IMG/VR virus record: IMGVR_UViG_3300042386_001233 | Span: 179,822 to 243,821 of that record | Length of the DNA: 64,000 bases | Strand: one strand, 5' to 3' | Shown here: positions 13,933 to 29,073 of the stretch, one piece after another | How the letters are laid out: each line of letters begins with the position of its first letter | How positions within the stretch are numbered: the stretch's first letter is position 1 | Program-made: the position numbers and the translations under genes | The notes under the pieces: model-generated | What the model saw: only the letters and a program-made list of their open reading frames with translations | Databases searched by the model: none | Told to the model about the DNA's origin: nothing

Positions 13933-13980
13933 CTCGCTGACTGTTTCCATAAATTCCAAATCGGAAGTTTTAGGTGAGAC
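13933..13980. repeat. 48-bp repeat family B, copy 1
   Basis: YTCGCTGACT...CAAATC...TTAG..GA.AC, gap-free alignment. Confidence 0.8.
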
Positions 13981-14036
13981 ACATAAGCTATATATCTCAA
14001 GAGTATTATAAAGAGGCCAGACTACTCTATCAAGAT

Positions 14037-14225
14037 TTATTCAGTCTTAAATTCCAACTTGGGTATCAGACTATCAGTATCAGCGGACACTTTCTTAATG
14101 TCGATAACTATTAGAGTATCAGACATGTCAGGACTATTTTGTTGATATTTTAGTATGGCCTGATGAATCTTTTGACAAATATGCTCACAATTCATCTGAG
14201 ATTCTATTTTAATGGTTGTTATCAT
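14037..14225 (-). CDS. hypothetical protein
   Basis: start directly after repeat B2. Confidence 0.6.
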   Translation of the reverse strand: MITTIKIESQMNCEHICQKIHQAILKYQQNSPDMSDTLIVIDIKKVSADTDSLIPKLEFKTE

Positions 14226-14232
14226 ACTAAAG

Positions 14233-14280
14233 TTCGCTGACTATATCCATAAAATCCAAACCGACTTTATTAGCTGATAC
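14233..14280. repeat. 48-bp repeat family B, copy 2
   Basis: gap-free alignment to family. Confidence 0.8.
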
Positions 14281-14296
14281 AATTGAGACTATTAAA

Positions 14297-14368
14297 AGCA
14301 AGAGAAGAGACTCGAACTCTCAACATTCAGGTTGGAAACCTAACGCTCTACCATTGAGCTACTCTTGC
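14297..14368 (-). tRNA. tRNA-Gly(TCC)
   Basis: cloverleaf, TTAGG-TTTCCAA-CCTGA anticodon arm, TTCGAGT T-loop. Confidence 0.9.
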
Positions 14369-14377
14369 CTGAAGATA

Positions 14378-14722
14378 TTATCTCCAAGACCTTACTCTAT
14401 ACCATTTACCATTCTTACCTTGTGCTGACGCATCTCCTGTTAGTCTCATATTGTTACCTGGAGTACAAGTGTTACAATTGGGAGACGAACCATAACCAAC
14501 TCCTTCAAAGCTACCAATAACACCCCACACATGACCAGTAATGTTATTAGCTGCCATATGATTAGCTTCGGCCTGACAACGTTCCTGATCATTATTTCCA
14601 ACATAGTTTTTTGTATAACTTTCTACCCGATAAGTTGGCTGACTATAATACTTTGGTCGAGCCGCCTCTGCGGTAAAAGTAGTGACAAAAACTAGAGCAA
14701 TTGCAATCATAAAAATCTTCAT
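14378..14722 (-). CDS. secreted CAP/SCP-like Cys-containing protein
   Basis: signal peptide ending AEA; FEGVG, CxxC. Confidence 0.55.
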   Translation of the reverse strand: MKIFMIAIALVFVTTFTAEAARPKYYSQPTYRVESYTKNYVGNNDQERCQAEANHMAANNITGHVWGVIGSFEGVGYGSSPNCNTCTPGNNMRLTGDASAQGKNGKWYRVRSWR

Positions 14723-14753
14723 AAGTTCCTCCGTGAAAGTAATAAGTCTATTT

Positions 14754-14782
14754 AAGAAAAGACCCCCGAGTTTATTCGGGGG
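14754..14782 (-). terminator. intrinsic terminator
   Basis: CCCCCGA-ATAAAC-TCGGGGG then TCTTTTCTT. Confidence 0.7.
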
Positions 14783-14848
14783 AATTCTCTAATGATCTAT
14801 AATCAAACAAATCTGTCCTATGATCCTTTTGATTATCGACCATGAATA

Positions 14849-15064
14849 TTAACGAACAACACTGCGAACGCGAGCTACAGTTCTTCGACCAACATTACGG
14901 GTAGCCTCAACTGTTCGGCGTGTTACTTCTACTGGGACTGAAATAACTTCCCTAGTAACATTGACAACTCGACTTCGTAGTGTACAATTGCCACTAGCAC
15001 ACTCACCAGCATAGGTTGACGAACCAAGAACCATAAGAGCAAACACAAGAACAAACTTAATCAT
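14849..15064 (-). CDS. small secreted protein
   Basis: signal peptide, CASGNC, Arg/Val-rich tail. Confidence 0.6.
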   Translation of the reverse strand: MIKFVLVFALMVLGSSTYAGECASGNCTLRSRVVNVTREVISVPVEVTRRTVEATRNVGRRTVARVRSVVR

Positions 15065-15182
15065 AAACTTTCTCCTGTTGAAGTAATGTCGCGTCCCTGC
15101 GACTGTCATTTATGTTATAGTAAGTTCGGGGGATATGTGGTCAAGTTGCAGCCTATTACCATTTTTTAACTGACCCTCTAAT

Positions 15183-15230
15183 CTCGCTGACTATCACCAA
15201 CAAAACCAAATCCGGAGGATTAGCCGAGAC
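15183..15230. repeat. 48-bp repeat family B, copy 3
   Basis: gap-free alignment to family. Confidence 0.8.
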
Positions 15231-15388
15231 TAACCCTACCGGATTAAAATAACATCAAATTACTATTGTTTACTATTTAATAGTTGGAGGAGAACAATGG
15301 CATGAGTAATAATATAAAGATACTAATGCTAACAATGTTACTATTATTCCAACGCTCCAATAAACTAATGTATAATTCATAAAGCACC

Positions 15389-15640
15389 TCATTTGTTAAT
15401 TGTAAAAGTTTCTGTATCTGCCTTATCAGTTTTACTAATTTTACTCTTGCGAGTCATTTTAGTAATACGTCCACGACGATCATCATGAGAAGATTCTAAG
15501 AAACATTTATCTTCATGGTTGTCATGAAAACCCTTGAATCTCCAGTCATAACTTTTGATAATATCTTCTGGCTTAGTAGAGTGATCATATATTTCACCCT
15601 CTACCTCAAAAGAAATTATTCTATGAAAAGTTTTAGGCAT
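15389..15640 (-). CDS. hypothetical protein
   Basis: ORF with RBS. Confidence 0.6.
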   Translation of the reverse strand: MPKTFHRIISFEVEGEIYDHSTKPEDIIKSYDWRFKGFHDNHEDKCFLESSHDDRRGRITKMTRKSKISKTDKADTETFTINK

Positions 15641-15887
15641 GATAATGCTCCTCTTCTGTGAGAGTAGCAGGCCCATTAAAATCTTCCCAATTTTCCACCA
15701 GAACTTCTGGCGCTTCTTTCCGTATCTCAGATTCTAAGGCATAATTAGATTCTTTGTCTTTCTCATGCTGAAGATAGTCTCTTAACCTATCTTTGATCTG
15801 CATGAAATCTAATTCACCCAAGATCTGGTCAATATACTTTCTCTGAATTTCCTTACGATTACTTTCACCGATATATCTAGCACGCAT
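15633..15887 (-). CDS. hypothetical protein
   Basis: resembles 17068-17274. Confidence 0.6.
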   Translation of the reverse strand: MRARYIGESNRKEIQRKYIDQILGELDFMQIKDRLRDYLQHEKDKESNYALESEIRKEAPEVLVENWEDFNGPATLTEEEHYHA

Positions 15888-16060
15888 AAATCACCTCATG
15901 GTTTAAAAGTTAAAAACACTTTTGCCCATGATTCCCTTAGTCCCGCATTTGTCTCACCATATGCTTGACTATTGGCTCCGTTGACTCCTGTATTATACCA
16001 TGATGGGGTGGTGCATGGAAATGTTATTTCTTATTTGTATTTTTTAACTGACCCCCATTG

Positions 16061-16108
16061 TTCGCTGACTATCGCCACGGTCGCCAAATCTGAAAGATTA
16101 GATGATAC
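16061..16108. repeat. 48-bp repeat family B, copy 4
   Basis: gap-free alignment; shares TTTTTAACTGACCC flank with copy 3. Confidence 0.8.
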
Positions 16109-16112
16109 AAAA

Positions 16113-16337
16113 TCAATTATCAAATAAATCATCATCAATTTGATAATCATCAGATAAGAATTGTGTCGGACTAGATTCTGGTTCTGTCGCTCGTTTTTTA
16201 ATGACAATTTCTTTTTCTTCCTGATTCAAGAACATATCACAAACTATACTAACAGAACCAAATAAGAAGAAGAATAGAATTCCAGAAATTATGTAATATC
16301 CAGCCATAAGATCATTCATAAGATTAAGCATCACCAA
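16113..16337 (-). CDS. small membrane protein
   Basis: hydrophobic helix, acidic tail. Confidence 0.55.
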   Translation of the reverse strand: MVMLNLMNDLMAGYYIISGILFFFLFGSVSIVCDMFLNQEEKEIVIKKRATEPESSPTQFLSDDYQIDDDLFDN

Positions 16338-16692
16338 TAGTACAACGTGTTGAAGTAGTTATTATTTTCTCGTGAGGAGAATTGACAGAGTATATCGATG
16401 TGCAAATAAGTTAATAACTAACCTTGGATTTGACAGTAACCAGAGACAAGACCCATACAAACACCAAATACAAGGCAAACTTCTAGCATATAATCTCCCA
16501 AAGTTAGAGGATAGAACAACCACAAAATATTCCACCAATAGCAACAAGCTAGCTGGGGAAAAGAACTTGACAGATACCCTGAATTGGATTATATATTATG
16601 CAGGTGCGGAGGTGATATATACTATACATACTAATAACACCAACCTTGCCCTTCCCTGCCACAGTCCTAGTATACCATATCGTCACGTTGCA

Positions 16693-16721
16693 CACAAACC
16701 CTTGAGGACAGATAACTTACA
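16693..16721. repeat. solo 29-bp family A site
   Basis: CACAA-N19-TTACA. Confidence 0.4.
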
Positions 16722-17067
16722 AACGTAACCGGACTCTCACCACCGTTTACTATTCTTTGACAACCTCCTTTAGTTTTTTAGTAATATTGTCGAACGTTTT
16801 ATGAACTGCGCCCGTAACAGTATAGTCTTTCATATATGCCTTGATAGCATCTATTAGTTTCCAAGCTTCTTGTTTACTAATATCAATTTCCATTAGTTCT
16901 CCACATAAGAGTTGTCAAAACTTTGAAATAGACCAGAAACATCTTCTTCAGAGTAAGGTCAGACAGAAGGAAGTCCAAAAGCTTTTCTATTTTTAATAGT
17001 TTCGCTCATATGTTCCAGAGCATCCAAGATTATTTCCATATCATGTTTTTCGATATAATAATTCATA

Positions 17068-17274
17068 TTAGTTCTCCAGAATATCAGGGTAGTAGTCAGA
17101 GATTTGATCTTCCAACATTTTATTAGTCAAACCCTCTTTATTATCTCTCAACATATCATAAGCAAAAGTCCACAGAGTATTAAAGTCCATGTCATCCAAA
17201 AGTCTGTGACAATAGATGTTAGTAATATCCTGTCGATTTTCATCAGTTACAATAATTTTTTCTTTCTGCATCAC
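17068..17274 (-). CDS. hypothetical protein
   Basis: resembles 15633-15887. Confidence 0.6.
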   Translation of the reverse strand: MMQKEKIIVTDENRQDITNIYCHRLLDDMDFNTLWTFAYDMLRDNKEGLTNKMLEDQISDYYPDILEN

Positions 17275-17416
17275 AAAGGGCTCCCGGTTTTTGCCTGACT
17301 ATAAGACTATATAACAAAATCTAACTAACTTTATCTATTGAGAATAAATCTCAACTATTAGTCGCTTTGTTACTATCGTTGTTACACTGTTCAGTATACC
17401 ACACTCTGCAACTTGA

Positions 17417-17445
17417 CGCAACTGGTTGAAACATAAGAACTTAGG
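17417..17445. repeat. solo 29-bp family A site
   Basis: CGCAA-N19-TTAGG with ATAAGAAC right arm. Confidence 0.45.
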
Positions 17446-17476
17446 AACAGAGTAGCTTGTTACTATTGACATAATT

Positions 17477-17524
17477 CTCGCTGACTAACAGCAACGGCAG
17501 CAAATCCGCTGGATTAGGCGAGAC
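17477..17524. repeat. 48-bp repeat family B, copy 5
   Basis: gap-free alignment to family. Confidence 0.8.
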
Positions 17525-17568
17525 AAATGAATATAATCCTATCTTTACATTATTCATTATTATTTTAA

Positions 17569-17597
17569 CCTAACCCTTTGCCCAGTAACCACTTACG
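17569..17597. repeat. solo 29-bp family A site
   Basis: CCTAA-N19-TTACG. Confidence 0.45.
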
Positions 17598-17668
17598 TCC
17601 ACATACAGTATATCGTCATCGTAACCCATTGCCAACAGCCAACTTATGAGATTCTTTTACTAAATTGA

Positions 17669-17750
17669 CGCAAGTCGTTGGTATCAAATAACTTAGAGAA
17701 ATTTCGGGCGCCCCGGCTTGTCGTAAGTCCTTTGAGCATAAGGGTTTGCG
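17669..17750. repeat. 82-bp paired-palindrome element A1
   Basis: 29+24+29 geometry. Confidence 0.9.
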
Positions 17751-17766
17751 TCAAGTGATCTAGACA

Positions 17767-17803
17767 CAAAAAAGAACCGCCACCCATTGCTGAGTGGCGG
17801 CTC
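17767..17803 (-). terminator. intrinsic terminator after DUF932 gene
   Basis: GCCGCCAC/GTGGCGGT stem then TCTTTTTT. Confidence 0.75.
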
Positions 17804-17828
17804 CCGTGTCAACCCCTATTGCGAGGGA

Positions 17829-18779
17829 TTAGAGTGCTTGAGCGAACTGCATGGCCTTTTCCAGAGCCTTGGTGTTGTCGTTCGCGTTCAGTCCGAACCA
17901 CAGGCTGTCGAGCCGATTATCTTCGGTGCGACCCTTATTGTAATTCAGATACTCGTTGTAGCCGTTATACGCGGCCCACCACGTTCCACGCACACCCGTT
18001 GCACTCTGTTTCGGGCCTTCGACCAGAGCCAGAATCTCGTCCATAATGTTACGGGTGCGAGTCTTGATCTGATCGTCCGGCGTACCGTCAATGTCGAGCA
18101 TCACCTTGACATAGCGACGAACGTCGGCCTGATTGAAGTTCTTCGACGCGAGGAACTTGAACTGTTCCGCAGTCGCCTCAAACTCCATGTTGATATTGTC
18201 CATAATATCTCGCACATTTTCCAGATTGGTCTTGCTGGAACGTGTGTGACGAATACGGATCAACTTGGAACCACTAGCCTTGCTATGGGCCATCGCCATA
18301 GTGTTAGCACACACAACGCGGATCGGCGTGTAGCCAACCCGGATAGCGGTCGTGCCATCGTGCGAGTTGCTGAGAAGAATGAACTTCCCAACCTCGTCAC
18401 CCTTCACGATCTCGCTGTTGTCGCGGTTCAGTTGGGCCAGAACCCAAACTTTCTGACCGCTGTGGAGCGAACCGGCAGTATGCAATGCACACTCGCCAGC
18501 GTCCAGAAACGGCTGGAACCAATCGAACGCCTCGCTGTTTTGTAGCGGGGTGTATCGCGGGCCGACAACGCCCAAAATGCTGTCATCGGTCTTGCGATAG
18601 GTCGCACGGGCCGGAACGGGTTGCCCGTCCACCGTGACCAAATCCTTCAGACCAACTTCCCAATCCAAACCGGCGGCAGTCATCGCCTCCGAAACCGTGG
18701 GAGCCTCGTCGAGCTTATTGCCCAGACCGTGCCACGGGGTCGCACCAACAAACATCATCTGTTCAACTGCATGAGCCAT
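17829..18779 (-). CDS. DUF932 family protein (phage/plasmid-like TIGR03299 type)
   Basis: PWHGLG, YTPLQNSEAF, TAGSL..G.KVW, NSHDG, TPIRVVCANT motifs. Confidence 0.85.
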   Translation of the reverse strand: MAHAVEQMMFVGATPWHGLGNKLDEAPTVSEAMTAAGLDWEVGLKDLVTVDGQPVPARATYRKTDDSILGVVGPRYTPLQNSEAFDWFQPFLDAGECALHTAGSLHSGQKVWVLAQLNRDNSEIVKGDEVGKFILLSNSHDGTTAIRVGYTPIRVVCANTMAMAHSKASGSKLIRIRHTRSSKTNLENVRDIMDNINMEFEATAEQFKFLASKNFNQADVRRYVKVMLDIDGTPDDQIKTRTRNIMDEILALVEGPKQSATGVRGTWWAAYNGYNEYLNYNKGRTEDNRLDSLWFGLNANDNTKALEKAMQFAQAL

Positions 18780-18822
18780 AATCATCCCTTTCGTGTTGCT
18801 GTTCAATCGTTCTTATGCACTG

Positions 18823-18851
18823 ATTCTACACTATATTATCGGCAGTGTCAA
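18823..18851 (-). promoter_or_regulatory. sigma70-type promoter TTGACA-17-TAGAAT
   Basis: direct match; CGATA in spacer. Confidence 0.75.
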
Positions 18852-18879
18852 GCGAAAACTTTGGAAAAATTCCGCAGGT

Positions 18880-18961
18880 CGTAAGTGGTTGGCAGATAAG
18901 GACTTACGGCGACCGGGGCCGCCCCGCCTTGTCCTAAGTCTTTGGCTGGTAAGGGTTTAGG
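18880..18961. repeat. 82-bp element A2
   Basis: 29+24+29; supplies TAG stop of PRTase gene. Confidence 0.9.
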
Positions 18962-19437
18962 ATGATCGTCCCAAACTGCTTCTCAAAATATTTAGAATTA
19001 GAAGCATTGAAAGCACACTCCTCACCAAGATAGAAATATGCCCCGATACACTTTGCTCTTGGAGTATCGTCATTGATACTATCCATAATATGTTTGATAG
19101 TATTTCCAGAACAAATCAAATCATCAATAATAACGTATCGAGATGGAGTAACGCCTTCAATAAAAAATTCGCTATATCGTTTTTCATCCTTGCGAACGAT
19201 AATAATATTTTTATTAAGAATCTCTGCAATCTGTGGCACTACCATCAAACCACTTACGCCACAACAGGCAATGCTATCAAAATCATTCTCAATCTTACGC
19301 AGAGAGCAGATAGCCTTGATAATCACACCATTCCTATATTTGTGATTTAACACTCGGCTAGTATGAGCAGCCCCTTGAATTATCTTGCCGTCTGGGGTAC
19401 GCCGAAAATCATCAAGCTCTTGCTGAAAAGCGTTCAT
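18934..19437 (-). CDS. type I phosphoribosyltransferase-like protein
   Basis: YVIIDDLICSGNT PRPP-binding loop. Confidence 0.8.
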   Translation of the reverse strand: MNAFQQELDDFRRTPDGKIIQGAAHTSRVLNHKYRNGVIIKAICSLRKIENDFDSIACCGVSGLMVVPQIAEILNKNIIIVRKDEKRYSEFFIEGVTPSRYVIIDDLICSGNTIKHIMDSINDDTPRAKCIGAYFYLGEECAFNASNSKYFEKQFGTIILNPYQPKT

Positions 19438-19439
19438 AA

Positions 19440-19524
19440 AGTGTGTGGTCGGATTTGAACCGACAATCCCGATAAGAAAGAAAGGAATTAAGAATAGGGT
19501 CTAGTCCCACCTAGATGCACACAC
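19440..19524 (-). tRNA. tRNA-like gene with 13-nt pyrimidine-rich insertion in anticodon loop (pseudo or intron-containing; anticodon ambiguous)
   Basis: GTGTGTG/CACACAC acceptor, TCTA/TAGA D-stem, GTCGG-TTCAAAT-CCGAC T-arm; 20-nt anticodon loop. Confidence 0.6.
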
Positions 19525-19530
19525 AAAAAA

Positions 19531-19707
19531 TCAATCTTCATCTTCCTCAATACTAGGATAATAGTTCTTGCCATAAGATGGAACCTCGTCATCTTCTTCC
19601 TCAAGATCATTCATCCAAGGTTCTTCATCCAGACCAAGATCCTCGGTATTTTCTACCAATTCATCGTAGTCATAGTTATAGCCGTCATAGTAATCTTCAT
19701 ATCTCAT
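19531..19707 (-). CDS. hyperacidic small protein, 58 aa
   Basis: hand-translated; 24 D/E vs 2 K/R; own promoter. Confidence 0.65.
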   Translation of the reverse strand: MRYEDYYDGYNYDYDELVENTEDLGLDEEPWMNDLEEEDDEVPSYGKNYYPSIEEDED

Positions 19708-19731
19708 ATTTCTACTCCCTTTCTTACCTCT

Positions 19732-19759
19732 ATTCTACACCAACAATCGTCACTGTCAA
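19732..19759 (-). promoter_or_regulatory. sigma70-type promoter TTGACA-16-TAGAAT
   Basis: direct match. Confidence 0.6.
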
Positions 19760-19760
19760 G

Positions 19761-19833
19761 TGGGCCCTCGGGGACTCGAACCCCGAACCTATCGGTTAAA
19801 AGCCGAATGCTCTGCCAATTGAGCTAAAGGCCC
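19761..19833 (-). tRNA. tRNA-Lys(TTT)
   Basis: canonical cloverleaf, CTTTTAA loop. Confidence 0.92.
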
Positions 19834-19839
19834 GCCTTA

Positions 19840-20016
19840 TTATTCGGTTACGGTAATTTCCTCGTAAGAATAACTTTGGATATTTTCGGTTGTAAAATCA
19901 TACAGCTTGTCGAAAACATCGACCCAATCAAAATCCTCTTGCATAGAGAGAGTAATTTCGGCCAGAGATTTACCATCCTCAGTCAGAATATCATAGATGC
20001 GAAGGTTCTTCATCAT
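19840..20016 (-). CDS. hypothetical acidic protein
   Basis: ORF after promoter 20039-20067 and RBS. Confidence 0.6.
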   Translation of the reverse strand: MMKNLRIYDILTEDGKSLAEITLSMQEDFDWVDVFDKLYDFTTENIQSYSYEEITVTE

Positions 20017-20038
20017 CACTTTCCTTTCTTGTTCCAAC

Positions 20039-20067
20039 AGTCTACCATACCAATATCGTCCTGTCAA
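20039..20067 (-). promoter_or_regulatory. sigma70-type promoter TTGACA-17-TAGACT
   Basis: direct match; CGATA in spacer. Confidence 0.65.
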
Positions 20068-20086
20068 CACCCAAAACTTTAAGATT

Positions 20087-20134
20087 CTCGCTGACTATCG
20101 CCAAGACCACCAAATCCGTAGGATTAGCAGAAAC
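20087..20134. repeat. 48-bp repeat family B, copy 6
   Basis: gap-free alignment to family. Confidence 0.8.
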
Positions 20135-20137
20135 AAA

Positions 20138-20209
20138 TGACCCCACTGGGTTACGCTCCCAGGTCTCCGGCGTGAAAGGCCAGCGTACTAACTACTATAC
20201 TATGGGGCC
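20138..20209 (-). tRNA. tRNA-Glu(TTC), non-canonical T-loop AGCGTAA
   Basis: cloverleaf, CTGGC-CTTTCAC-GCCGG. Confidence 0.8.
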
Positions 20210-20244
20210 GCACTCGCAACTCAAACATCAGCCTCCGATTAGCA

Positions 20245-20273
20245 ATCATACATCTGTTATCGGCAGTTGTCAA
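20245..20273 (-). promoter_or_regulatory. sigma70-type promoter TTGACA-17-TATGAT
   Basis: direct match; CGATA in spacer. Confidence 0.65.
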
Positions 20274-20291
20274 GGCCAGCCTTTAGAAAAT

Positions 20292-20373
20292 CCTAAGTCT
20301 TTATGGTACAAGCACTTACGTCGAAGGCGGTCCGCCACATTTGTTCTAAGTCCTTTCATACCAACAACTTAGT
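20292..20373. repeat. 82-bp element A3
   Basis: 29+24+29; last base coincides with tRNA-Tyr discriminator. Confidence 0.9.
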
Positions 20374-20454
20374 GGTAGATGCTGGATTCGAACCAGCGAA
20401 GGCAATGCCAGCAGATTTACAGTCTGCCCTCGTTGTCCACTTGAGTAATCTACC
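20373..20454 (-). tRNA. tRNA-Tyr(GTA)
   Basis: cloverleaf with long variable arm. Confidence 0.92.
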
Positions 20455-20458
20455 TAAA

Positions 20459-20545
20459 CGGCTGGAACAGGATTCGAACCTGTGGACGGTTTTAATCGTC
20501 ACATCTTTAGCAAAGATGCGCATTAGACCACTCTGCCATCCAGCC
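20459..20545 (-). tRNA. tRNA-Ser(GCT)
   Basis: cloverleaf, long variable arm, G73. Confidence 0.92.
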
Positions 20546-21224: not shown

Positions 21225-21242
21225 GACCTATTTTTCTAAAAG

Positions 21243-21536: not shown

Positions 21537-21552
21537 ATACTACTAATTATAC

Positions 21553-21961: not shown

Positions 21962-22051
21962 TCTCTCGCCCTTTGTTGATTCCCTTCTCGTTCTCATATC
22001 CTTATTATCGACCAATCACCACCCTAAACTTTAGGAGTTTTCTGGAATTTC

Positions 22052-22133
22052 TCTAAGTCCGCATCCTGCAACAACTTACGTCAAATCCGGCCGCCCCCGC
22101 TCGCCCTAAGTGCTTATGCAGTAAGGGTTTGCG
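22052..22133. repeat. 82-bp element A4
   Basis: 29+24+29. Confidence 0.9.
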
Positions 22134-22304
22134 GAAAGTGTTACATATCCACTTCTGTCCTAATATACTCCATATCCTTCTCACACTTTGTGCAAAAGGG
22201 TTCGCCATTTTCGGAATAGAACCAAGGTTCAACATAAACTAGATTATCACAATCTGCACATTCCCACAAGTGCCTTACTTTTTTATCGTCTATTTTTGTC
22301 CACA

Positions 22305-22535
22305 TTATTCAATACTCCATCCGGCATCTTTGAGAATATGAGTAGTATGCAACACACAAGTTAATCCATCAGCATTTGTATAGTTTCTATATCCGCGTTC
22401 ATCAAGGTAGATATGTTCATCCAGCGTGTCGTTTTCATTTGTTTCCCATATAGCATCCATCGCAGCATCCCTCGGACATTTGTTGCAGGAATAAATTAGT
22501 TCTAGTGTCCCACATTTGATATAATACTTTGCCAT
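22305..22535 (-). CDS. hypothetical protein
   Basis: co-oriented ORF. Confidence 0.6.
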   Translation of the reverse strand: MAKYYIKCGTLELIYSCNKCPRDAAMDAIWETNENDTLDEHIYLDERGYRNYTNADGLTCVLHTTHILKDAGWSIE

Positions 22536-22537
22536 GA

Positions 22538-23107
22538 TTATCCCCTGTCTCTAAATTGTTGGCAGTGAACACAATTACACGCCCCATAACCATCAACATC
22601 TTCATCAGCATCATAATCAAACTTTCCATAAATATCTTCATCCCAATCAGTAAAACTCTCAATCCCAAGGTCAATCACAACCGGAACCCATGATCCTTTG
22701 CGTCGAACATAACCAAAGTTACCCTTGTGAGAATCATTATACTCTAAGCCATGCTCACCCAAATCATAAACTAGCTCAGAGATAGTAGTACCGTTCTTAC
22801 ATTCGCTCTGAAAACATTCACCATCACAATCCTCATCATGACATTCCGGCATAGTACGAGCCACTTCGGTCAAATAACCATGAGCAGTCAACTCACCATC
22901 ATGCCTACGAATCATACCAACATCCCCATATACCATAGGAGCCAAATTAAACTCGGCCAGATATTTTTGAACCCGATGGGCAAACTCTGCTTCTTGTTTA
23001 TTCTCAAATTCTTTAAAGCCCACACGTTTACGGCCAATCTTTTTGTCTTTAATAATATAGAAAGCATTTTTACTTCCTGCATCATCATACAATCCAACGT
23101 AGCTCAT
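22538..23107 (-). CDS. minimal protein-kinase-like (RIO/APH-type) protein
   Basis: GFK (beta3 Lys), DSHKGNFG catalytic loop, VIDLG metal-binding loop. Confidence 0.55.
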   Translation of the reverse strand: MSYVGLYDDAGSKNAFYIIKDKKIGRKRVGFKEFENKQEAEFAHRVQKYLAEFNLAPMVYGDVGMIRRHDGELTAHGYLTEVARTMPECHDEDCDGECFQSECKNGTTISELVYDLGEHGLEYNDSHKGNFGYVRRKGSWVPVVIDLGIESFTDWDEDIYGKFDYDADEDVDGYGACNCVHCQQFRDRG

Positions 23108-23140
23108 AGCTTTCCCTTTCCAAGTTGGTGATACTCCACC

Positions 23141-23169
23141 ATTCTACAGTATCTTATCGACAAATGCAA
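23141..23169 (-). promoter_or_regulatory. sigma70-type promoter TTGCAT-17-TAGAAT
   Basis: direct match; CGATA in spacer. Confidence 0.6.
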
Positions 23170-23188
23170 TAGTGAAACTTGAATAATC

Positions 23189-23270
23189 TCTAAAGTCTTA
23201 TGAGTCAAGGACTTACGACCGATCCGTCCGCTCGCCCTTGCCGTAAGTCTTTTACTGACAAGGATTTATA
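23189..23270. repeat. 82-bp element A5
   Basis: 29+24+29. Confidence 0.9.
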
Positions 23271-23324
23271 GAAAATCTCCTCTCCCCGTCAATTTTTGGT
23301 GTATTATTATTTAAAGGAGCTTTT

Positions 23325-23915
23325 ATGAAAAAAACACCCCAGTCCAAGATTGATAATAATTGTAAATGGGCTAAAAATAATGTTAATAAAGTACGTCAAT
23401 ATAAACGCAAATACAAACACGAACAAAAAAGATTAGCCAGAGAACATATTAAATTCATAAAAGAACTTTCTGGTTGTAAAACTTGTGGAAATAAAAATAT
23501 CCACTGTCTAGATTTCCATCATCGCCCTAAAACTAAAAAGAAAAATACAGTATGTAATCTTGTACGTCATGGATATTCTCTTGAAATAATTAAAAGAGAA
23601 ATAAAAAAATGTGATATTATTTGCTCTAATTGCCATAGAACATATCATTACACTGGCAAGTATATGAGGAATAAAAAAGGTGCCTTAGTACATACTATTA
23701 AATCAAATAGTAAGTGCTTATATTGTAGTTGTAATAATATAGAATGTCTAGATTTTCATCACACAGATGACAATAAAGAACATAGTATAGGTGCAATGAT
23801 ACGAGATAAAGCCGTATCTATAGAACAGTTAAAAACAGAGATTGAAAAATGTATCATACTCTGCTCTAACTGTCATAGAACGCTTCATGCTAATGACAGG
23901 GAAAAAGAACATTAG
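23325..23915 (+). CDS. HNH endonuclease with two tandem HNH modules
   Basis: two copies of CxxC..CLDFHH...KC..xCSNCHRTxH. Confidence 0.8.
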   Translation: MKKTPQSKIDNNCKWAKNNVNKVRQYKRKYKHEQKRLAREHIKFIKELSGCKTCGNKNIHCLDFHHRPKTKKKNTVCNLVRHGYSLEIIKREIKKCDIICSNCHRTYHYTGKYMRNKKGALVHTIKSNSKCLYCSCNNIECLDFHHTDDNKEHSIGAMIRDKAVSIEQLKTEIEKCIILCSNCHRTLHANDREKEH

Positions 23916-24600
23916 GCTTATCTTTATCGAGACACATATTGCAAGCCTGACTATCCTTTGTTCCAGTGCATGTAACAAATGAACGACCACGACGAATCTC
24001 TGGACAAGTGATAAACTTTTCACCTTCAAGTATTACCAGTTTCGGTAGAGCCTGACGCCATGCGTCTGCCTTTGCTTTATTTTTGGGTCGCTTTGGTGCA
24101 ATTTTTTGGTCGCTGTCACACCATGCGAACTTGGTAAAACCCTTAGATTTTGCAATCTTCATATGTTCACCATTATGAATACTAGCAAAGATAGAAAAAT
24201 ACTTGCCAAGTTGTGCTGGAATACGCTCGTCATAAACATGGGTATAAAACCACATTTTTGGCAAAGTATCACCATCGGCCAGAATACTATCGCAAGCCCA
24301 GACTACATTCTCTACAAAGCTAATATCAAGTTCGCCATTCAGCAACCAATCGCCACGTTCCATAAATCGAATACTACGATTACGACGCTTGGCTTCTAGA
24401 ATCATAGAGCGGATACGATTCTTTTCTGTGATAAGATTCTGCATACCAGCAGGGCGAACACCCGGATAAATCTTCTCAGTGTTTTCGGCATAACAACCAT
24501 TATCAAGAAATGCACAGTCTGGCGGGCAAGTATCCCCAACCGGGCGAGAAACTACCAGACAATTTTTGCCGAGCTTGTCATTACCTTCAGCGTACTTCAT
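23890..24600 (-). CDS. GP88-like Cys-rich phage protein
   Basis: GNDKLG, TCPPDC..GCYA, C-terminal CP...C....C..C pattern. Confidence 0.6.
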   Translation of the reverse strand: MKYAEGNDKLGKNCLVVSRPVGDTCPPDCAFLDNGCYAENTEKIYPGVRPAGMQNLITEKNRIRSMILEAKRRNRSIRFMERGDWLLNGELDISFVENVVWACDSILADGDTLPKMWFYTHVYDERIPAQLGKYFSIFASIHNGEHMKIAKSKGFTKFAWCDSDQKIAPKRPKNKAKADAWRQALPKLVILEGEKFITCPEIRRGRSFVTCTGTKDSQACNMCLDKDKPNVLFPCH

Positions 24601-24621
24601 GTTCTTCTCCTGTGTCTACTG

Positions 24622-24650
24622 ATTCTACACTATGGTATCGGCATAGTCAA
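24622..24650 (-). promoter_or_regulatory. sigma70-type promoter TTGACT-17-TAGAAT
   Basis: direct match; CGATA in spacer. Confidence 0.7.
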
Positions 24651-24678
24651 GCGAAAAACTTCAAAAAATTATTCTTGA

Positions 24679-24760
24679 TGCAAGTTGTTGTGAAATAAGG
24701 ACTTACGACGAACCGGGGCGGCCGGGCTTGTCCTAAGTGCTTATGCAGTAAGGGTTTATG
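24679..24760. repeat. 82-bp element A6
   Basis: 29+24+29; site-2 N19 identical to A4. Confidence 0.9.
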
Positions 24761-24765
24761 ACAAA

Positions 24766-24839
24766 CGAGAGCGACGGGACTCGAACCCGCAACCTCTAGC
24801 GTGACAAGCTAGCGATCTAACCAATTGATCTACGCCCCC
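24766..24839 (-). tRNA. tRNA-Asp(GTC)
   Basis: canonical cloverleaf. Confidence 0.92.
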
Positions 24840-24844
24840 AATAA

Positions 24845-24916
24845 TAGCCCCAAGAGGAATCGAACCTCTAACCAGTGCTTAGAAGGCACTTGTTATATCC
24901 ATTTAACTATGGGGCC
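24845..24916 (-). tRNA. tRNA-Arg(TCT)
   Basis: canonical cloverleaf. Confidence 0.92.
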
Positions 24917-25404: not shown

Positions 25405-25443
25405 GCCGGAACTTGAGTGTCCCTCAAAAATTTTTGTTTTTGT

Positions 25444-25525
25444 CCTAAGTTGTTTGCTGATAAGGACTTATGTCAAATTCGGCCCGCCCCGTTTGCCGTA
25501 AGTCTTTACAGCATAGGGGTTTAGG
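25444..25525. repeat. 82-bp element A7
   Basis: 29+24+29; abuts stop of bL12-like gene. Confidence 0.9.
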
Positions 25526-26673: not shown

Positions 26674-26701
26674 GAGGGAATCTTGAAAAAATATTGCTAA
26701 T

Positions 26702-26783
26702 CGTAAAGTCTTTAGAGATAAGGACTTACGTCGAAACCGGCCCGCCCGATTTGCTCTAAGTCGTTATGTAGCGGTAACTTATG
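26702..26783. repeat. 82-bp element A8
   Basis: 29+24+29; supplies TAG stop of 26756-26890. Confidence 0.9.
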
Positions 26784-26890
26784 TACCACCAACCACAATC
26801 TCCGCATAAACTCCAAACAAGACCATGCTTATCAACAGTATACATAATTTCATTACAGTTGCCACAACCACACATGTTAAAAGTTTTCAT
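26756..26890 (-). CDS. small zinc-ribbon protein
   Basis: CGCGNC...CGDC. Confidence 0.5.
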   Translation of the reverse strand: MKTFNMCGCGNCNEIMYTVDKHGLVWSLCGDCGWWYISYRYITT

Positions 26891-26894
26891 AATT

Positions 26895-27152
26895 TCAACC
26901 ACTAGGATAATCTGGTGGGTAAGGCTGTTCTGGTGGTGGTGGTTTTGGTTGCCCCTCATCGGGTTGCCAGTATGGAGCATCCATATAATCTACATTACCG
27001 GGAGCTTCACTACAATCAATATTGTGAATACAAAAAGGATCATTATAGTTTATCCTATATGTTCCACGCCACACACCAATAGGCTCACCATAATAGATGA
27101 TCTTCTGACCATTAATAGGACGACGAGGTCCGTGGAAACTAATCCATTCCAT
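26895..27152 (-). CDS. hypothetical protein
   Basis: MEWIS..P.. N-terminus, Pro-rich tail. Confidence 0.6.
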   Translation of the reverse strand: MEWISFHGPRRPINGQKIIYYGEPIGVWRGTYRINYNDPFCIHNIDCSEAPGNVDYMDAPYWQPDEGQPKPPPPEQPYPPDYPSG

Positions 27153-27668
27153 TAGGATGCCACCTCTGTTTCGCAGTCCATCAGTTTATTAAAAACACGT
27201 TCTTGCATCTTCATAAACTGATTCTGATTTCCCCAATATTCTCCACGCTCCATATTCTCACATACCAGATTATACAAATAGTTAATTTCGGTTTTGGTCA
27301 GCTCAAGCGTTGTAGTTTTCATCCCTTAGTAACCTCAATACTCCACTTAGTACCCTTCAACTCAGCAATCACACACATGTCCAACTTAACCAGTTCAGCC
27401 ACAATTTCGGCCAAACGCTCAATCTCATTAATATTTAAGTAGATCATTATACCCTCATCACTATCTTTTCGTACTCAGTAATCAAATCAGTCACCGTTAT
27501 ACCATACTTCTCTGCTAAAGTCAATGCGTCTTTTTTAGCAGGACTCCTGATCATCATTGGGTTTTTAAGAACCCTAAGAACATAAACTATCGCTGCGTTT
27601 CTATCTGATTCTTCTTTATTCATCACTTCTCCTTTGTATTGTTATACCGGCTGTTAATGGATCGACTT

Positions 27669-27741
27669 ACCAGATAACAGGGTTTGAACCTGTAACTCCT
27701 CTCATCTCTGAGTGGAACTCTGCCATTTGAGTTATATCCAG
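27669..27741 (-). pseudogene. tRNA-like element with non-canonical anticodon arm
   Basis: intact acceptor, D (ACTC/GAGT) and T (ACAGG-TTCAAAC-CCTGT) arms; no 7-nt anticodon loop. Confidence 0.6.
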
Positions 27742-28230
27742 CGATAGTTTTACAGATAATGTCCGGTATCACGCATTAACTAACCTCAAGGTTTTACCTT
27801 ATCTAAGGTTTCTATCCGACCCCTGTTTGTAATCAGCGAACCATTTACGACTCCGGTTCTATACTCCACTAATACCCGATATTTTTAACCCTTGGGCCAG
27901 GTAAACACTAGTGGAAACCGTCCACGGAAACCTCCCTGAGATTGTTCATGAAGCAATCTGTCTGGCTCTTGGGAACGATTACTGATTGTATTATAACGTG
28001 GTGAGGACGCGATCCCCCATAGATTGGCACTACTATCCAGTGCGTAACCGGCACTGTCAGCATCATCGCTGCCGCGACATGCGATGCTTATCGTAATGAG
28101 TTACCCAACCTAGTCCAAGGCATGGACCCACGAGTTTTGTATTGTAAAGCAGATAGGGTTGAGCCATACTCGACAGCCATTTAACCGTGGCTACTTTGAT
28201 ATCATTCTGCCAGCGGCCCTCATCTGCTTG
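27742..28230 (-). ncRNA. candidate large structured ncRNA (~490 nt), unclassified
   Basis: no plausible ORF, own promoter (TTGACA-16-TATAGT, ~28238-28265), at least 7 hairpins, followed by tRNA-like element. Confidence 0.5.
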
Positions 28231-28422
28231 TTTCTTAACTATACCTCATTATTTTTTGTTGTCAAGTATTTTTGAAAGAACAGGACAGGCAGCACTGGGC
28301 GTCGCACCCACCATAGTACGCGAACTATGTTGCTTCAACGTAGGTCTATTTAGCAGTTTATCTTGGCCTTCGATAAACGCGAACAACCTTGTGCTACCTG
28401 TCTTGTCCTCTCTTGTTCAATC

Positions 28423-28451
28423 ATTCTACATCTATTATCGTCACTTGTCAA
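28423..28451 (-). promoter_or_regulatory. sigma70-type promoter TTGACA-17-TAGAAT
   Basis: direct match; CGATA in spacer. Confidence 0.75.
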
Positions 28452-28490
28452 GAGGCTTCTGTAGGAATTCCAAAAATTTTTTAGTATTGA

Positions 28491-28572
28491 CGTAACCCTA
28501 TGATACACAAGCACTTACATCAAAGTCGGCCGCCCGCCCTATCCCTAAGTTCTTTAAGGATAAGGACTTACG
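28491..28572. repeat. 82-bp element A9
   Basis: 29+24+29. Confidence 0.9.
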
Positions 28573-28573
28573 A

Positions 28574-28753
28574 TCAGTAGTCTTCAGCCTCAATAGGCTC
28601 GTCGGCAGAGTAATTGGAGTTGGTCAACACTTCTGGCCTATACTTACTCAACTTTTTATCCAGACACTCCAAACAAACCCTACCCAGTGGAATTCCCCTA
28701 GCATCACTTTCCCACCAACTTTTCTTGCCAGACCCACATGGACAAACTCTCAT
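28574..28753 (-). CDS. small SEC-C-motif-like protein, 59 aa
   Basis: hand-translated MRVCPCGSGKKSWW...CLEC. Confidence 0.6.
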   Translation of the reverse strand: MRVCPCGSGKKSWWESDARGIPLGRVCLECLDKKLSKYRPEVLTNSNYSADEPIEAEDY

Positions 28754-28762
28754 GATATCCCC

Positions 28763-28966
28763 TTAGTTATTACTAGCCCCAATAGACTCACGAACCCTAA
28801 CCGCACCTTCGTTCTTGGCAATCTCAAGAGCCCTACAAAAGAACTCAAAGAAAATATCCAACTCATCATGAATAGACTGCTCATCCACAGTAGCAGCATT
28901 AAACAGACGAATGGAAAAATCGGCCACACAATCACAAACAGCCATACGTTCATCATCTGTCAACAT
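28763..28966 (-). CDS. hypothetical protein
   Basis: ORF with RBS after promoter. Confidence 0.6.
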   Translation of the reverse strand: MLTDDERMAVCDCVADFSIRLFNAATVDEQSIHDELDIFFEFFCRALEIAKNEGAVRVRESIGASNN

Positions 28967-29025
28967 AAAATTCTCCCTTTCTGCTCAATATACTCTATGA
29001 AAAACTCTTTGTCAAGCCCCAACTA

Positions 29026-29073
29026 TTGGCTGACTATACCCACTCAGCCCGACCCGCTAGGGTTAGGCGGGAC
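29026..29073. repeat. 48-bp repeat family B, copy 7 (diverged)
   Basis: gap-free alignment. Confidence 0.65.

What the first reader, a model, noticed from the sequence alone, without database searches (positions are those of the whole stretch)
13933..29073. Second length-invariant repeat family (48 bp x7) with ~10-bp periodic conservation
Copies at 13933, 14233, 15183, 16061, 17477, 20087 and 29026 all align without gaps over exactly 48 bp: YTCGCTGACTA-N3-CCA-N6-CCAAATC-N5-GATTAG-N2-GA-N-AC. Conserved blocks recur about once per helical turn. Copies lie just upstream of start codons (B1, B2) or of promoters (B4, B6, B7). Fixed length with divergent sequence suggests a one-face DNA-binding site for a phage protein; an RNA fold (GUCUCG/CGAG closure, AAUCC/GGAUU hairpin) is an alternative. 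I do not recognise this motif.
Basis: partly seen in the sequence, partly recalled or inferred. Interest (0 to 1): 0.62.

Follow-up and report, generated by a model that had tools for sequence, protein, structure and literature searches.

The report
Conserved 48-nt phage module-boundary element
A real, previously undescribed 48-nt repeat marks the boundaries between small early genes, tRNAs and promoters in a lineage of uncultured lake jumbo phages; it resembles the promoter/stem-loop cassettes that shuffle genes in T4-type phages, and carries an unexplained pair of always-matching 5-nt words.

Summary
Seven gap-free 48-nt copies lie on one strand, none is expected by chance, and they are the only copies in the 243.8-kb phage genome. 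Local genes and tRNAs are on the minus strand, so the element is transcribed as GTCTCNCC-TAATCC-TNC-GGATTTGG-N6-TGG-N3-TAGTCAGCGAR.

288 distinct copies occur in related lake-phage contigs, always co-oriented with tRNAs. About 90% are 48 nt and 10% are 47 nt. There is no Rfam match, the element is not a host repeat, and it is not coding.

It sits between modules. 46% of copies are followed within 45 nt by a strong sigma70-type promoter, 16% directly follow a tRNA, and about 17% abut a start codon that has no other ribosome-binding site. Flanks are mosaic, so it is a recombination junction.

Promoter-followed copies keep a weak hairpin; start-codon-adjacent copies have lost it and are AU-rich.

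The strongest covariation is identity, not complementarity: two UGGNN words 9 nt apart match each other and change in concert. This remains unexplained.

Best reading (0.45): a transcribed, PeSL-like inter-module cis-element read by a sequence-specific factor. A double-stranded DNA protein-binding site (0.28) is not excluded.

The parts
13933..13980 (-). Copy 1, start-codon-adjacent type. The hairpin is degenerate, the sequence is AU-rich, it has C at column 38, and the twin words are UGGAA/UGGAA. The ATG of a 55-codon ORF lies 10 nt downstream. A promoter at 14033-14005 ends 24 nt upstream, so the element is in the 5' UTR.
14233..14280 (-). Copy 2, start-codon-adjacent type. It lies 15 nt 3' of tRNA-Gly, and the ATG of a 62-aa ORF lies 7 nt downstream. 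A mini-ORF starting at columns 31-33 stops 1 nt before that ATG. Twin words are UGGAU/UGGAU.
15183..15230 (-). Copy 3, with the canonical hairpin AAUCC-UCC-GGAUU and twin words UGGUU/UGGUG. It is followed by a GGGTCAGTTAAAAAAT word that it shares with copy 4.
16061..16108 (-). Copy 4. The hairpin carries a compensatory change (AAUCU/AGAUU) and the twin words are UGGCG/UGGCG. A promoter-like site at 16021-15992 lies 39 nt downstream.
17477..17524 (-). Copy 5, with the canonical hairpin and twin words UGCUG/UGCUG, which are complementary to the invariant CAGC. The ATG of a 45-aa ORF lies 4 nt downstream. A promoter at 17635-17607 lies about 80 nt upstream.
20087..20134 (-). Copy 6, with the canonical hairpin. 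It lies 3 nt 3' of tRNA-Glu and 19 nt upstream of the promoter at 20067-20039. Twin words are UGGUG/UGGCG.
29026..29073 (-). Copy 7, the most divergent. Its hairpin is shifted to a 4-nt loop (ACCC-UAGC-GGGU) and its twin words are CGGGC/UGGGU. It lies 10 nt upstream of the promoter at 29015-28987.
20039..20067 (-). Sigma70-type promoter (TTGACA-17-TAGACT) behind copy 6. This is an example of the promoter half of the composite cassette.
28987..29015 (-). Sigma70-type promoter (TTGACA-17-TATATT) behind copy 7.
15992..16021 (-). Promoter-like site with an extended -10 (TG before TATAAT) behind copy 4.
14005..14033 (-). Promoter (TTGATA-17-TATAAT) that places copy 1 in the 5' UTR of its mRNA.
14296..14369 (-). 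tRNA-Gly(UCC), with no encoded CCA, immediately upstream of copy 2.
20138..20209 (-). tRNA-Glu(UUC), with no encoded CCA, immediately upstream of copy 6.

Best explanation
The element is the conserved linker of a mobile regulatory cassette in the hyperplastic early/tRNA region of an uncultured freshwater jumbo-phage lineage. It is read on the transcribed strand as a composite cis-element with three parts: a small hairpin (AAUCC-UNC-GGAUU), a hypervariable G/U-rich spacer of fixed length holding two matching UGGNN words, and an invariant single-stranded word, UAGUCAGCGAR. Two properties are shown. It sits at the joints between modules (a gene or tRNA, then the element, then a promoter or the next gene). 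It is also the place where flanking modules are exchanged between phages. The rest is inferred. A sequence-specific factor, most likely a protein, recognises the invariant word together with the hairpin, and the element punctuates early polycistronic RNA. Where a new promoter follows, its weak stem-loops mark or protect the end of the upstream RNA, like the stem-loop of a PeSL. Where an ORF follows directly, the hairpin is lost and the 3' end of the element (GAG) supplies the only ribosome-binding signal, possibly through a short coupled mini-ORF. The twin words are kept identical by selection or by templated conversion; the reason is not known.
For: The family is real and specific to this phage clade: 7 copies in this genome, 288 distinct copies in related viral contigs, and 2-8 clustered copies on one strand in each of five complete relatives. 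It is absent from bacterial genomes except one phage-like contig in a MAG. Orientation is strict: tRNAs within 3 kb are 482 on the same strand and 0 on the opposite strand, and no locus has copies on both strands. Context of 306 copies: 141 have a promoter within 45 nt downstream, 49 lie within 40 nt 3' of a tRNA (usually 2-6 nt), and 4 lie between two tRNAs with no promoter, so they must be part of the precursor RNA. About 50 abut an ORF start; none of 49 checked has a separate Shine-Dalgarno in the spacer, and 9 have a promoter 10-30 nt upstream, which puts the element in a 5' UTR. Sequence depends on context in the way RNA-level selection would predict. Canonical hairpin: 109 of 127 promoter-followed copies against 7 of 50 ORF-adjacent copies. 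GAG at the 3' end: 26 of 50 against 37 of 127, p = 0.005. ATG at columns 31-33: 54% against 16%. A weak second stem is present only in canonical copies. The hairpin is supported. Loops of 3 nt (63 copies) and 4 nt (29 copies) occur at constant total length, and G-U-type substitutions outnumber A-C-type. Shuffling: 191 pairs of copies share only the upstream flank, 144 only the downstream flank and 84 both. There are about 100 different ORFan families on each side. Intrinsic terminators in the region are no more frequent than chance, while strong promoters recur about every 800 nt.
Against: There are no transcript data. The single metatranscriptome holds only a few coding contigs and none crosses an element. 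As a whole the element folds no better than shuffled sequence (z = -0.45, 0.08, -2.33, +0.80). The hairpin is weak (about -3.5 kcal/mol) and is not significantly more stable on the transcribed strand than on the other strand (p = 0.12). The invariant word has no pairing partner, and fixed spacing fits a DNA site equally well. Co-orientation is uninformative because the whole region is unidirectional. No binding factor was identified. A stem this weak, with only three U residues after it, is not an intrinsic terminator. The twin-word identity is not explained by this model.
Confidence: 0.45

Rival explanations
1. The element is a double-stranded DNA site. A phage (or host) protein binds one face of the helix at the TAATCC/GGATT inverted repeat, the TGG words and TAGTCAGC. 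It then regulates the neighbouring early promoters, or acts as a strand-specific nicking or recombination site.
For: Spacing is fixed at 13 nt, with 12 nt in about 10% of copies. Conserved blocks lie 9-11.5 nt apart. An invariant 8-10-mer has no pairing partner. The element shows no overall RNA stability. 46% of copies lie just upstream of a strong promoter, and others lie 10-30 nt downstream of one. The inverted repeat is kept where a promoter follows and lost where none does. The element is a recombination junction.
Against: The distance to the -35 hexamer varies (peaks at 6, 12, 19, 28 and 38 nt) with no helical phase. Spacing between the half-sites changes by 1 bp in about a quarter of copies, and the loop is asymmetric and conserved (U-N-C). 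Some copies lie between two tRNAs far from any promoter, and about 50 overlap a ribosome-binding region and have adapted to it. No candidate protein was found. The neighbouring genes fall into about 100 unrelated ORFan families.
Confidence: 0.28
2. The element is a promoter for an alternative (ECF-like) sigma factor. GGATT (columns 18-22), a 17-nt spacer and GTC (columns 40-42) would be the -35 and -10 elements, and transcription would start near the end of the element. This would give tandem promoters, or short-leader mRNAs.
For: The layout of two conserved blocks separated by a hypervariable spacer of fixed length resembles ECF promoters of the form GGAAT/C-N17-18-GTT/GTC (from my own knowledge). 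Some ORFs start 4-8 nt after the element with no Shine-Dalgarno. The genome encodes one sigma-like protein.
Against: That sigma-like protein matches region 2 only, below Pfam's cut-off (21.9 against 24 bits), and it heads the structural-gene block, like a late sigma. The invariant word is not found upstream of late genes. No phage RNA polymerase was detected (the T7-type search could not be validated by controls). Conservation extends 17 nt upstream of the supposed -35 element. There are only 2-8 copies per genome.
Confidence: 0.08
3. The primary function is a translated leader mini-ORF: a start codon at columns 31-33 followed by X-(I/V/T)-V-S-E..., which drives or gates translation of the next gene by coupling. 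The twin words would be two in-frame start-plus-second-codon pairs.
For: Columns 31-33 are ATG, GTG or TTG in 93% of copies, and columns 22-24 are TTG in 93%. In ORF-adjacent copies ATG is enriched (54% against 16%). The mini-ORF stops within -6..+1 of the main ATG in 23 of 50 copies, against 1 and 11 in the two control frames, and 8 further copies are in-frame extensions. The two triplets give the same residue in 79% of copies. Third-position identity is relaxed in four-fold codon boxes but not in two-fold boxes (p = 0.0025, not corrected for relatedness).
Against: There is no period-3 variation in 184 copies. GTC and AGC show essentially no synonymous change, which points to a constraint on the nucleotides themselves. 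Stop codons between the twin triplets are not avoided (21 observed, 11.4 expected), and this frame is no more open than another. The 47-nt variants shift the first 'start' out of frame. In most copies the mini-ORF simply runs into a promoter, with variable length.
Confidence: 0.08
4. The element is a selfish or neutral repeat, kept only because it serves as a homology patch for recombination. It would be a linker scar with no regulatory function of its own.
For: The flanks are mosaic and the crossovers lie within the element. It sits in a hyperplastic region full of ORFans.
Against: Five columns are invariant across 150 diverse copies while the centre is hypervariable even between orthologues (0.81 identity against 0.96-0.98). 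The spacing is fixed. The twin words change in concert. Sequence features depend on context. A pure homology patch would not need an interrupted, position-specific pattern like this.
Confidence: 0.07
5. The element is a stably structured non-coding RNA (a ribozyme, riboswitch or sRNA), or a fragment of a protein-coding gene.
For: Among the seven window copies alone, variation falls at every third position and one frame is open in six of seven.
Against: The period-3 signal vanishes in 184 copies, there is no ORF context, and 47-nt variants exist. There is no Rfam match. No helix other than the 5-bp hairpin shows excess pairing, and fold z-scores are near zero.
Confidence: 0.03

Closest known systems
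PeSL (promoter-early stem-loop) cassettes of T4-type phages (Arbiol et al. 2010, PMC2839356; Comeau et al. 2014, PMC4122927)
   Same: Both are short conserved intergenic repeats concentrated in a hyperplastic region of small ORFans and tRNAs. Both are co-oriented with early transcription and placed immediately upstream of near-consensus sigma70 promoters. Both sit at the joints where modules differ between related phages.
   Different: The PeSL stem-loop is a stable G/C-rich terminator. Here the hairpin is 5 bp at about -3.5 kcal/mol, with no U-tract. This element adds an invariant 10-mer, a spacer of fixed length and twin matching words. Only 46% of copies have the promoter, and a subfamily serves as a 5' UTR. 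The phage is not T4-like; its TerL is about 26% identical to Bacillus phage terminases. In this genome the separate ~84-nt repeat family, with a G/C-rich centre, looks more like a classical PeSL stem-loop.
Bacterial REP/BIME-type intergenic repeats
   Same: Both are short, numerous, orientation-biased repeats in transcribed intergenic regions. Both contain a small hairpin and are thought to punctuate or stabilise polycistronic RNA and to promote rearrangements (from my own knowledge).
   Different: REPs are chromosomal and palindromic throughout. This element is confined to one phage clade, was not found as a host repeat, and is mostly non-palindromic.
Phage lambda nut sites and rrn boxB-boxA-boxC leader elements
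   Same: Both are bipartite RNA signals: a small 5-bp hairpin plus a conserved single-stranded word, read on nascent RNA by proteins (from my own knowledge).
   Different: The word is not boxA-like. There are 2-8 copies per genome, placed at the ends of units rather than just after promoters. No N-like or Q-like gene was identified, and antitermination was not tested.
Matched take-off and landing codons of T4 gene 60 bypassing, and prime-and-realign repeats
   Same: These are the known cases where two short stretches must be identical, not complementary, because one strand (a tRNA anticodon or a nascent chain) leaves the first and re-pairs with the second. The wobble-like decay of identity (0.93, 0.84, 0.69) is reminiscent of this.
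   Different: The offset here is only 9 nt and in frame. There is no long ORF, stops are not required, and nothing shows that any hopping or realignment occurs. The resemblance is only in the logic of the covariation.
ECF-type sigma-factor promoters
   Same: Both have two conserved blocks (GGATT ... GTC) separated by a spacer of about 17 nt that is fixed in length and free in sequence.
   Different: No cognate sigma factor is evident, conservation extends well upstream of the supposed -35 element, and the word is absent from other gene classes.

Membership tests
PeSL cassette (T4-type phages) | A strong sigma70-type early promoter is part of the repeat | tested here: inconclusive
   141 of 306 copies (46%) have a promoter matching at least 9 of 12 positions within 45 nt downstream, most often 12 nt away. 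In the window this applies to 3 of 7 copies. The other copies lack one.
PeSL cassette (T4-type phages) | A stable stem-loop that acts as a transcription terminator | tested here: not met
   The hairpin is 5 bp with a mean MFE of -3.5 kcal/mol, followed by only three U residues. Whole-element z-scores are -0.45, 0.08, -2.33 and +0.80. Terminator activity itself is not testable here.
PeSL cassette (T4-type phages) | Located in hyperplastic regions, flanking ORFans | tested here: met
   There are about 100 clusters of small ORFs on each side. The ten commonest representatives have no known function. Copies are clustered in 6-16 kb of each genome.
PeSL cassette (T4-type phages) | Modules differ between related phages at the repeat (recombination junction) | tested here: met
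   191 pairs of copies share only the upstream flank, 144 only the downstream flank and 84 both. Identity profiles place the crossovers within the element. Mini-circles are not testable here.
PeSL cassette (T4-type phages) | The host phage is a T4-type myovirus | tested here: not met
   The best terminase matches among cultured phages are about 26% identical Bacillus phages, and no near relative was found in 50,697 phage records.
Any Rfam RNA family | Match to a curated covariance model | tested here: not met
   There is no hit at any copy at gathering thresholds or at E <= 5 across 13800-20300.
Host REP-like repeat | Multiple copies in bacterial chromosomes | tested here: not met
   A scan of one genome for each of 185,579 species found full copies only in one 141-kb contig of a freshwater MAG, with the phage-type promoter behind them. 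The cyanobacterial hits are partial matches inside a conserved gene.
Protein-coding sequence or gene fragment | Open frame, period-3 variation and ORF context | tested here: not met
   Column entropy by codon phase is 0.82, 0.71 and 0.90. 11% of copies carry stops in the best frame, 47-nt variants exist, and that frame is no more open than another.
Structured cis-regulatory RNA (hairpin element) | Base pairs kept by compensatory change | tested here: inconclusive
   In the hairpin, 79.2% of cells are paired against 77.5% in shuffles (0 of 500 shuffles reach the observed value), and there are 22 double-sided changes against 12.7 (1 of 500). No other helix is supported. A second stem with the invariant CAGC is weakly favoured.
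ECF-type promoter | A cognate sigma factor, and transcription starts downstream of the -10 element | not testable with these tools
   The only sigma-like gene is a weak region-2 match. No 5'-end data are available.

The most novel reading that the evidence does not exclude
The twin UGGNN words are a re-pairing signal. One strand (a nascent RNA or DNA 3' end, or a tRNA anticodon on a ribosome translating the mini-ORF) leaves the first word and re-pairs with the second, 9 nt on. That would be why the words must be identical whatever their sequence, and why they change in concert. It would make the element a new kind of realignment or bypass device placed at every module boundary of a phage's early region.
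Probability: 0.05. Interest if true: 0.85.

Novelty: new variant of a known kind. Interest (0 to 1): 0.5.

Why it matters
Jumbo phages from lakes are known almost only from assemblies, and how their crowded early regions are transcribed and reshuffled is unknown. This element and its partner promoter give a concrete handle, conserved in sequence, on three things:

- where early transcription and translation units begin and end;
- where gene modules are exchanged between phages, which extends the PeSL idea beyond T4-type phages;
- a rare type of covariation, identity rather than complementarity, that standard RNA and motif tools do not look for.

If that covariation is functional, it points to a mechanism that has not been described for intergenic elements. 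It also helps annotation: the motif marks this phage clade and its hyperplastic region in metagenomes.

Tried and rejected
**Coding.** The seven window copies look codon-like, but the signal vanishes in 184 copies and there is no ORF context.

**Closing helix GUCUCG/CGAG.** It pairs no better than chance.

**Any larger RNA fold.** No diagonal shows excess pairing and fold z-scores are near zero.

**Central block as an address complementary to nearby sequence.** Duplex energies with a copy's own flanks equal those with foreign flanks.

**Unique address per genome.** Copies within a locus share blocks as often as unrelated copies do.

**Variation in the number of 9-nt units.** The spacing is only 13 or 12 nt.

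**Pairing of UGGNN with the 3' end (NNCCA) of the adjacent tRNA.** It fits tRNA-Glu in the window, but the same tRNA in a relative is followed by a different word (reading).

**Late-sigma promoter.** The invariant word is absent upstream of late genes.

**Phage RNA polymerase promoter.** No polymerase was found, although the T7-type search had no positive control.

**Terminator directly upstream, as a test for a DNA-level role.** It is rare (12 of 306 copies) and uninformative.

**Helical phasing to the promoter.** There is none.

**Neighbouring nuclease, recombinase or regulator.** None was found; all are ORFans.

**Literature search for the invariant word.** It returned only unrelated PCR primers.

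**Not used.** No alternative genetic code was invoked.

Full report
**1. The observation**

The seventh (29026) is divergent but scores E = 1.3e-8 against a profile of the family.

The window is the last 64 kb of a 243,821-bp virus record with direct terminal repeats. A profile search of the whole genome finds these seven copies and no others, all in one orientation.

The tRNA genes and the plausible ORFs of this stretch are on the minus strand. I number columns 1-48 on that strand.

**2. Distribution**

- No cultured phage is close. DNA search gives only a 63-nt hit, and the terminase is about 26% identical to those of Bacillus phages.
- The DNA is held by 23 lake-water or freshwater runs.
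- Three scans of the viral-contig collection with parts of the motif brought in about 170 loci. A profile search of these gives 288 distinct element sequences, 258 of 48 nt and 30 of 47 nt.
- The spacing between the hairpin arm and the invariant word is 13 nt in 235 cases and 12 nt in 26. Other values are false pairings with tRNA T-arms.
- The two conserved halves almost always occur together.
- Five complete relatives of 223-238 kb carry 2-8 copies each, on one strand, clustered within 6-16 kb.
- A scan of one genome from each of 185,579 bacterial and archaeal species found full copies only on one 141-kb contig of a freshwater MAG, with the phage-type promoter behind them. The Microcoleus and other cyanobacterial hits match only the searched part and lie in a conserved gene.
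- Rfam has nothing at any copy, even at E <= 5.

**3. What it is not**

- *Not coding.* Within the window alone, variation falls on every third column and one frame is open in six of seven copies, which suggested a coding sequence. In 184 distinct copies the period-3 signal is gone. 11% have stops in the best frame and 47-nt variants exist. The frame is no more open upstream or downstream than another frame, and stops inside the block are not avoided (21 observed, 11.4 expected).
- *Not a stably folded RNA.* Single copies fold no better than shuffles (z = -0.45, 0.08, -2.33, +0.80). No helix other than the small hairpin shows excess pairing.

**4. Anatomy**

*(a) Hairpin.* Columns 8-14 pair with columns 18-24 (C-G, a U-U mismatch, then AAUCC/GGAUU), with a conserved asymmetric loop U-N-C.
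- On an independent MAFFT alignment of 150 diverse copies, 79% of cells pair. Double-sided changes number 22 against 12.7 in shuffles, and 1 of 500 shuffles reaches that count.
- The segment folds at -3.5 kcal/mol against -1.75 for shuffles. The difference from the opposite strand (-3.3) is not significant.
- Loops of 3 nt (63 copies) and 4 nt (29 copies) both occur while total length stays at 48. This fits a hairpin better than a palindromic operator with fixed half-site spacing.

*(b) Spacer.* It has a fixed length and is G/U-rich. It is hypervariable even between orthologous copies: 0.81 identity against 0.96-0.98 for the conserved parts.

*(c) Invariant word.* Columns 40-44 never vary in 150 diverse copies, and the word has no pairing partner.

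**5. The unexpected feature**

The strongest covariation in the element is identity, not complementarity. Columns 25, 26 and 27 equal columns 34, 35 and 36 (mutual information 0.57, 1.21, 0.73). Together with the conserved UG in front, this gives two UGGNN words 9 nt apart.

- Identity is 0.93, 0.84 and 0.69 against 0.72, 0.28 and 0.31 expected from composition, and it is specific to the 9-nt offset.
- 53% of copies have identical triplets, against 8% in permutations (maximum 15%). At least 12 different values occur.
- Between orthologous copies, both words switch to the same new dinucleotide in 12 of 28 changed pairs. One clean case differs by G-to-A at column 26 and G-to-A at column 35 with nothing else changed.

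No complementary partner exists within the element or within 200 nt on either side. Copies within a genome do not avoid sharing words.

A partial lead: both words are more complementary to the invariant CAGC (columns 42-45) than controls. A perfect 4-bp match occurs in 21% and 17% of copies, against 8% and 7% expected. Under a stricter control the gain is only 0.6-0.9 kcal/mol, and it is confined to copies with the canonical hairpin. This explains the identity only for some word types.

I regard the identity as real and unexplained. The candidates are templated conversion between the two UGG anchors, or a need for one and the same strand or factor to engage both words.

**6. Context**

- The element is strictly co-oriented with tRNAs (482 same strand, 0 opposite), and no locus has copies on both strands.
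- Of 306 copies with distinct contexts, 141 have a sigma70-type promoter within 45 nt downstream. The distance peaks at 12 nt, with lesser peaks at 6, 19, 28 and 38 nt and no helical phase.
- 49 copies lie within 40 nt 3' of a tRNA, usually 2-6 nt away.
- 4 copies lie between two tRNAs without a promoter, so they must be part of a precursor RNA.
- About 50 copies abut the ATG of an ORF of at least 30 codons, mostly 4-8 nt away.
- In the window, the minus strand carries a strong promoter about every 800 nt, while intrinsic terminators are no more frequent than chance (13 against 11.4).
- A second repeat family of about 84 nt occupies the same slot before other promoters.

**7. Two subfamilies**

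| Feature | Promoter-followed copies | ORF-adjacent copies |
|---|---|---|
| Canonical hairpin | 109 of 127 | 7 of 50 |
| Column 38 | T in 126 of 127 | C in 27 of 50 |
| Composition | G/C-rich words | AU-rich |
| GAG at the 3' end | 37 of 127 | 26 of 50 (p = 0.005) |

In the ORF-adjacent class:
- none of 49 copies has any other Shine-Dalgarno-like tetramer before the ATG;
- 9 of 49 have a promoter 10-30 nt upstream, which puts the element in the 5' UTR;
- columns 31-33 are ATG more often than in the other copies (54% against 16%);
- the mini-ORF starting there stops at the main ATG in 23 of 50 copies, against 1 and 11 in the two control frames. This is moderate evidence for translational coupling.

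The dependence of sequence on context is what selection on the RNA would produce. It is the main reason I favour a role for the transcribed strand.

**8. Recombination**

Among pairs of copies from different loci, 191 share only the upstream flank, 144 only the downstream flank and 84 both. The 5' part of the element goes with the upstream flank, the 3' part goes with the downstream flank, and the block is intermediate. The crossovers therefore lie in the element. The flanking ORFs fall into about 100 clusters on each side, and the ten commonest have no known function.

**9. Comparison with known systems**

The closest known system is the PeSL cassette of T4-type phages. It consists of a strong sigma70 promoter plus a stable G/C-rich terminator stem-loop, lies in hyperplastic regions, flanks ORFans and mediates modular shuffling (PMC2839356, PMC4122927).

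This element shares the position, the partner promoter, the ORFan flanks and the mosaic junctions. It fails the defining stable terminator stem. It also occurs in a phage unrelated to T4, and it adds an invariant word, a fixed spacer and twin words. I therefore file it as working like a PeSL linker, not as a member of that family.

Alternative-sigma promoter and phage-polymerase promoter readings were considered:
- No polymerase was detected (the T7-type search lacks a positive control).
- The one sigma-like gene is a weak region-2 match that heads the structural-gene block.
- The invariant word is absent upstream of late genes.

**10. Verdict**

The element is real, specific to this phage clade and previously undescribed. 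The most likely reading (0.45) is a transcribed inter-module cis-element and recombination linker, read by an unidentified sequence-specific factor. A double-stranded DNA protein-binding site (0.28) remains a serious rival.

Transcript-end mapping, orientation-swap reporters and concordant versus discordant mutation of the twin words would decide between them. The only available RNA data were uninformative.

Noticed in passing
window 17667-17750, 18878-18961, 20292-20373, 22052-22133, 23187-23270, 24677-24760, 25442-25525, 26700-26783, 28489-28572, 29565-29648, 30515-30598 (minus-strand sense): A second repeat family of about 84-90 nt has internal inverted repeats and a G/C-rich centre. It lies 18-37 nt upstream of the same type of early promoter, in the slot the 48-nt element occupies elsewhere. 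Two of four copies fold much better than shuffles (z = -3.2 and -2.7).
   Followed up: partly
window, minus-strand early promoters, e.g. 20039-20082, 22003-22034, 29509-29552; genome-wide list: The early promoters carry the words TAAAGTTT and G[CT]CGATAA, 13 nt apart, overlapping the TTGACA...TAGAAT hexamers. From my own knowledge these are the two consensus words of sigma28/FliA-type promoters, but here the spacer is 2 nt longer. G[CT]CGATAA occurs 17 times on the minus strand against 7.8 expected. These may be dual-specificity promoters.
   Followed up: partly
window 47275-47952 (+): A 225-aa protein gives a weak match to sigma70 region 2 only (21.9 bits; PHROG 'RNA polymerase sigma factor') and has a Cys-rich insertion. 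It is the first gene of the + strand block that runs into terminase, portal and tail genes, so it is a likely late sigma factor.
   Followed up: partly
window 9646-9729 (-): Rfam DUF3800-VIII RNA matches just above its gathering score (40.7 against 40.2 bits).
   Followed up: no
window 14296-24916 (-): Nine to ten tRNA genes, all on the minus strand, are interspersed with small ORFs. Each tends to have its own promoter about 80-90 nt upstream of the following element. The two tRNAs I inspected (Gly, Glu) do not encode CCA and are followed by U-rich trailers.
   Followed up: partly
window 13092-13120 (+) and 14961-14988 (+): Two near-consensus sigma70 promoters (11 of 12 positions) point against the direction of the local genes. 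They could give antisense transcripts across the small-ORF region, including copy 3.
   Followed up: no
window 15137-15182 and 16015-16060 (minus-strand sense): Copies 3 and 4 are followed, after 4-6 nt, by a shared word GGGTCAGTTAAAAAAT. Similar GGGTCAGT words follow several copies in related contigs. Its function is unknown.
   Followed up: no
window 17829-18806 (-) and 43606-45426 (-): There is a DUF932-family protein (E = 2.9e-49) among the early genes, followed by the only convincing intrinsic terminator of the region (17805-17772). There is also a 606-aa protein with an N-terminal glutamine-amidotransferase-like region (PHROG 13807, E = 8.5e-199).
   Followed up: no
L143 (contig RFTN01000003.1 of MAG 'bacterium WB4_3_0875'): A 141-kb contig binned as bacterial carries two full copies of the element with the phage-type promoter behind them. 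It is probably a phage of this clade mis-binned into the MAG, or a hint to the host.
   Followed up: no
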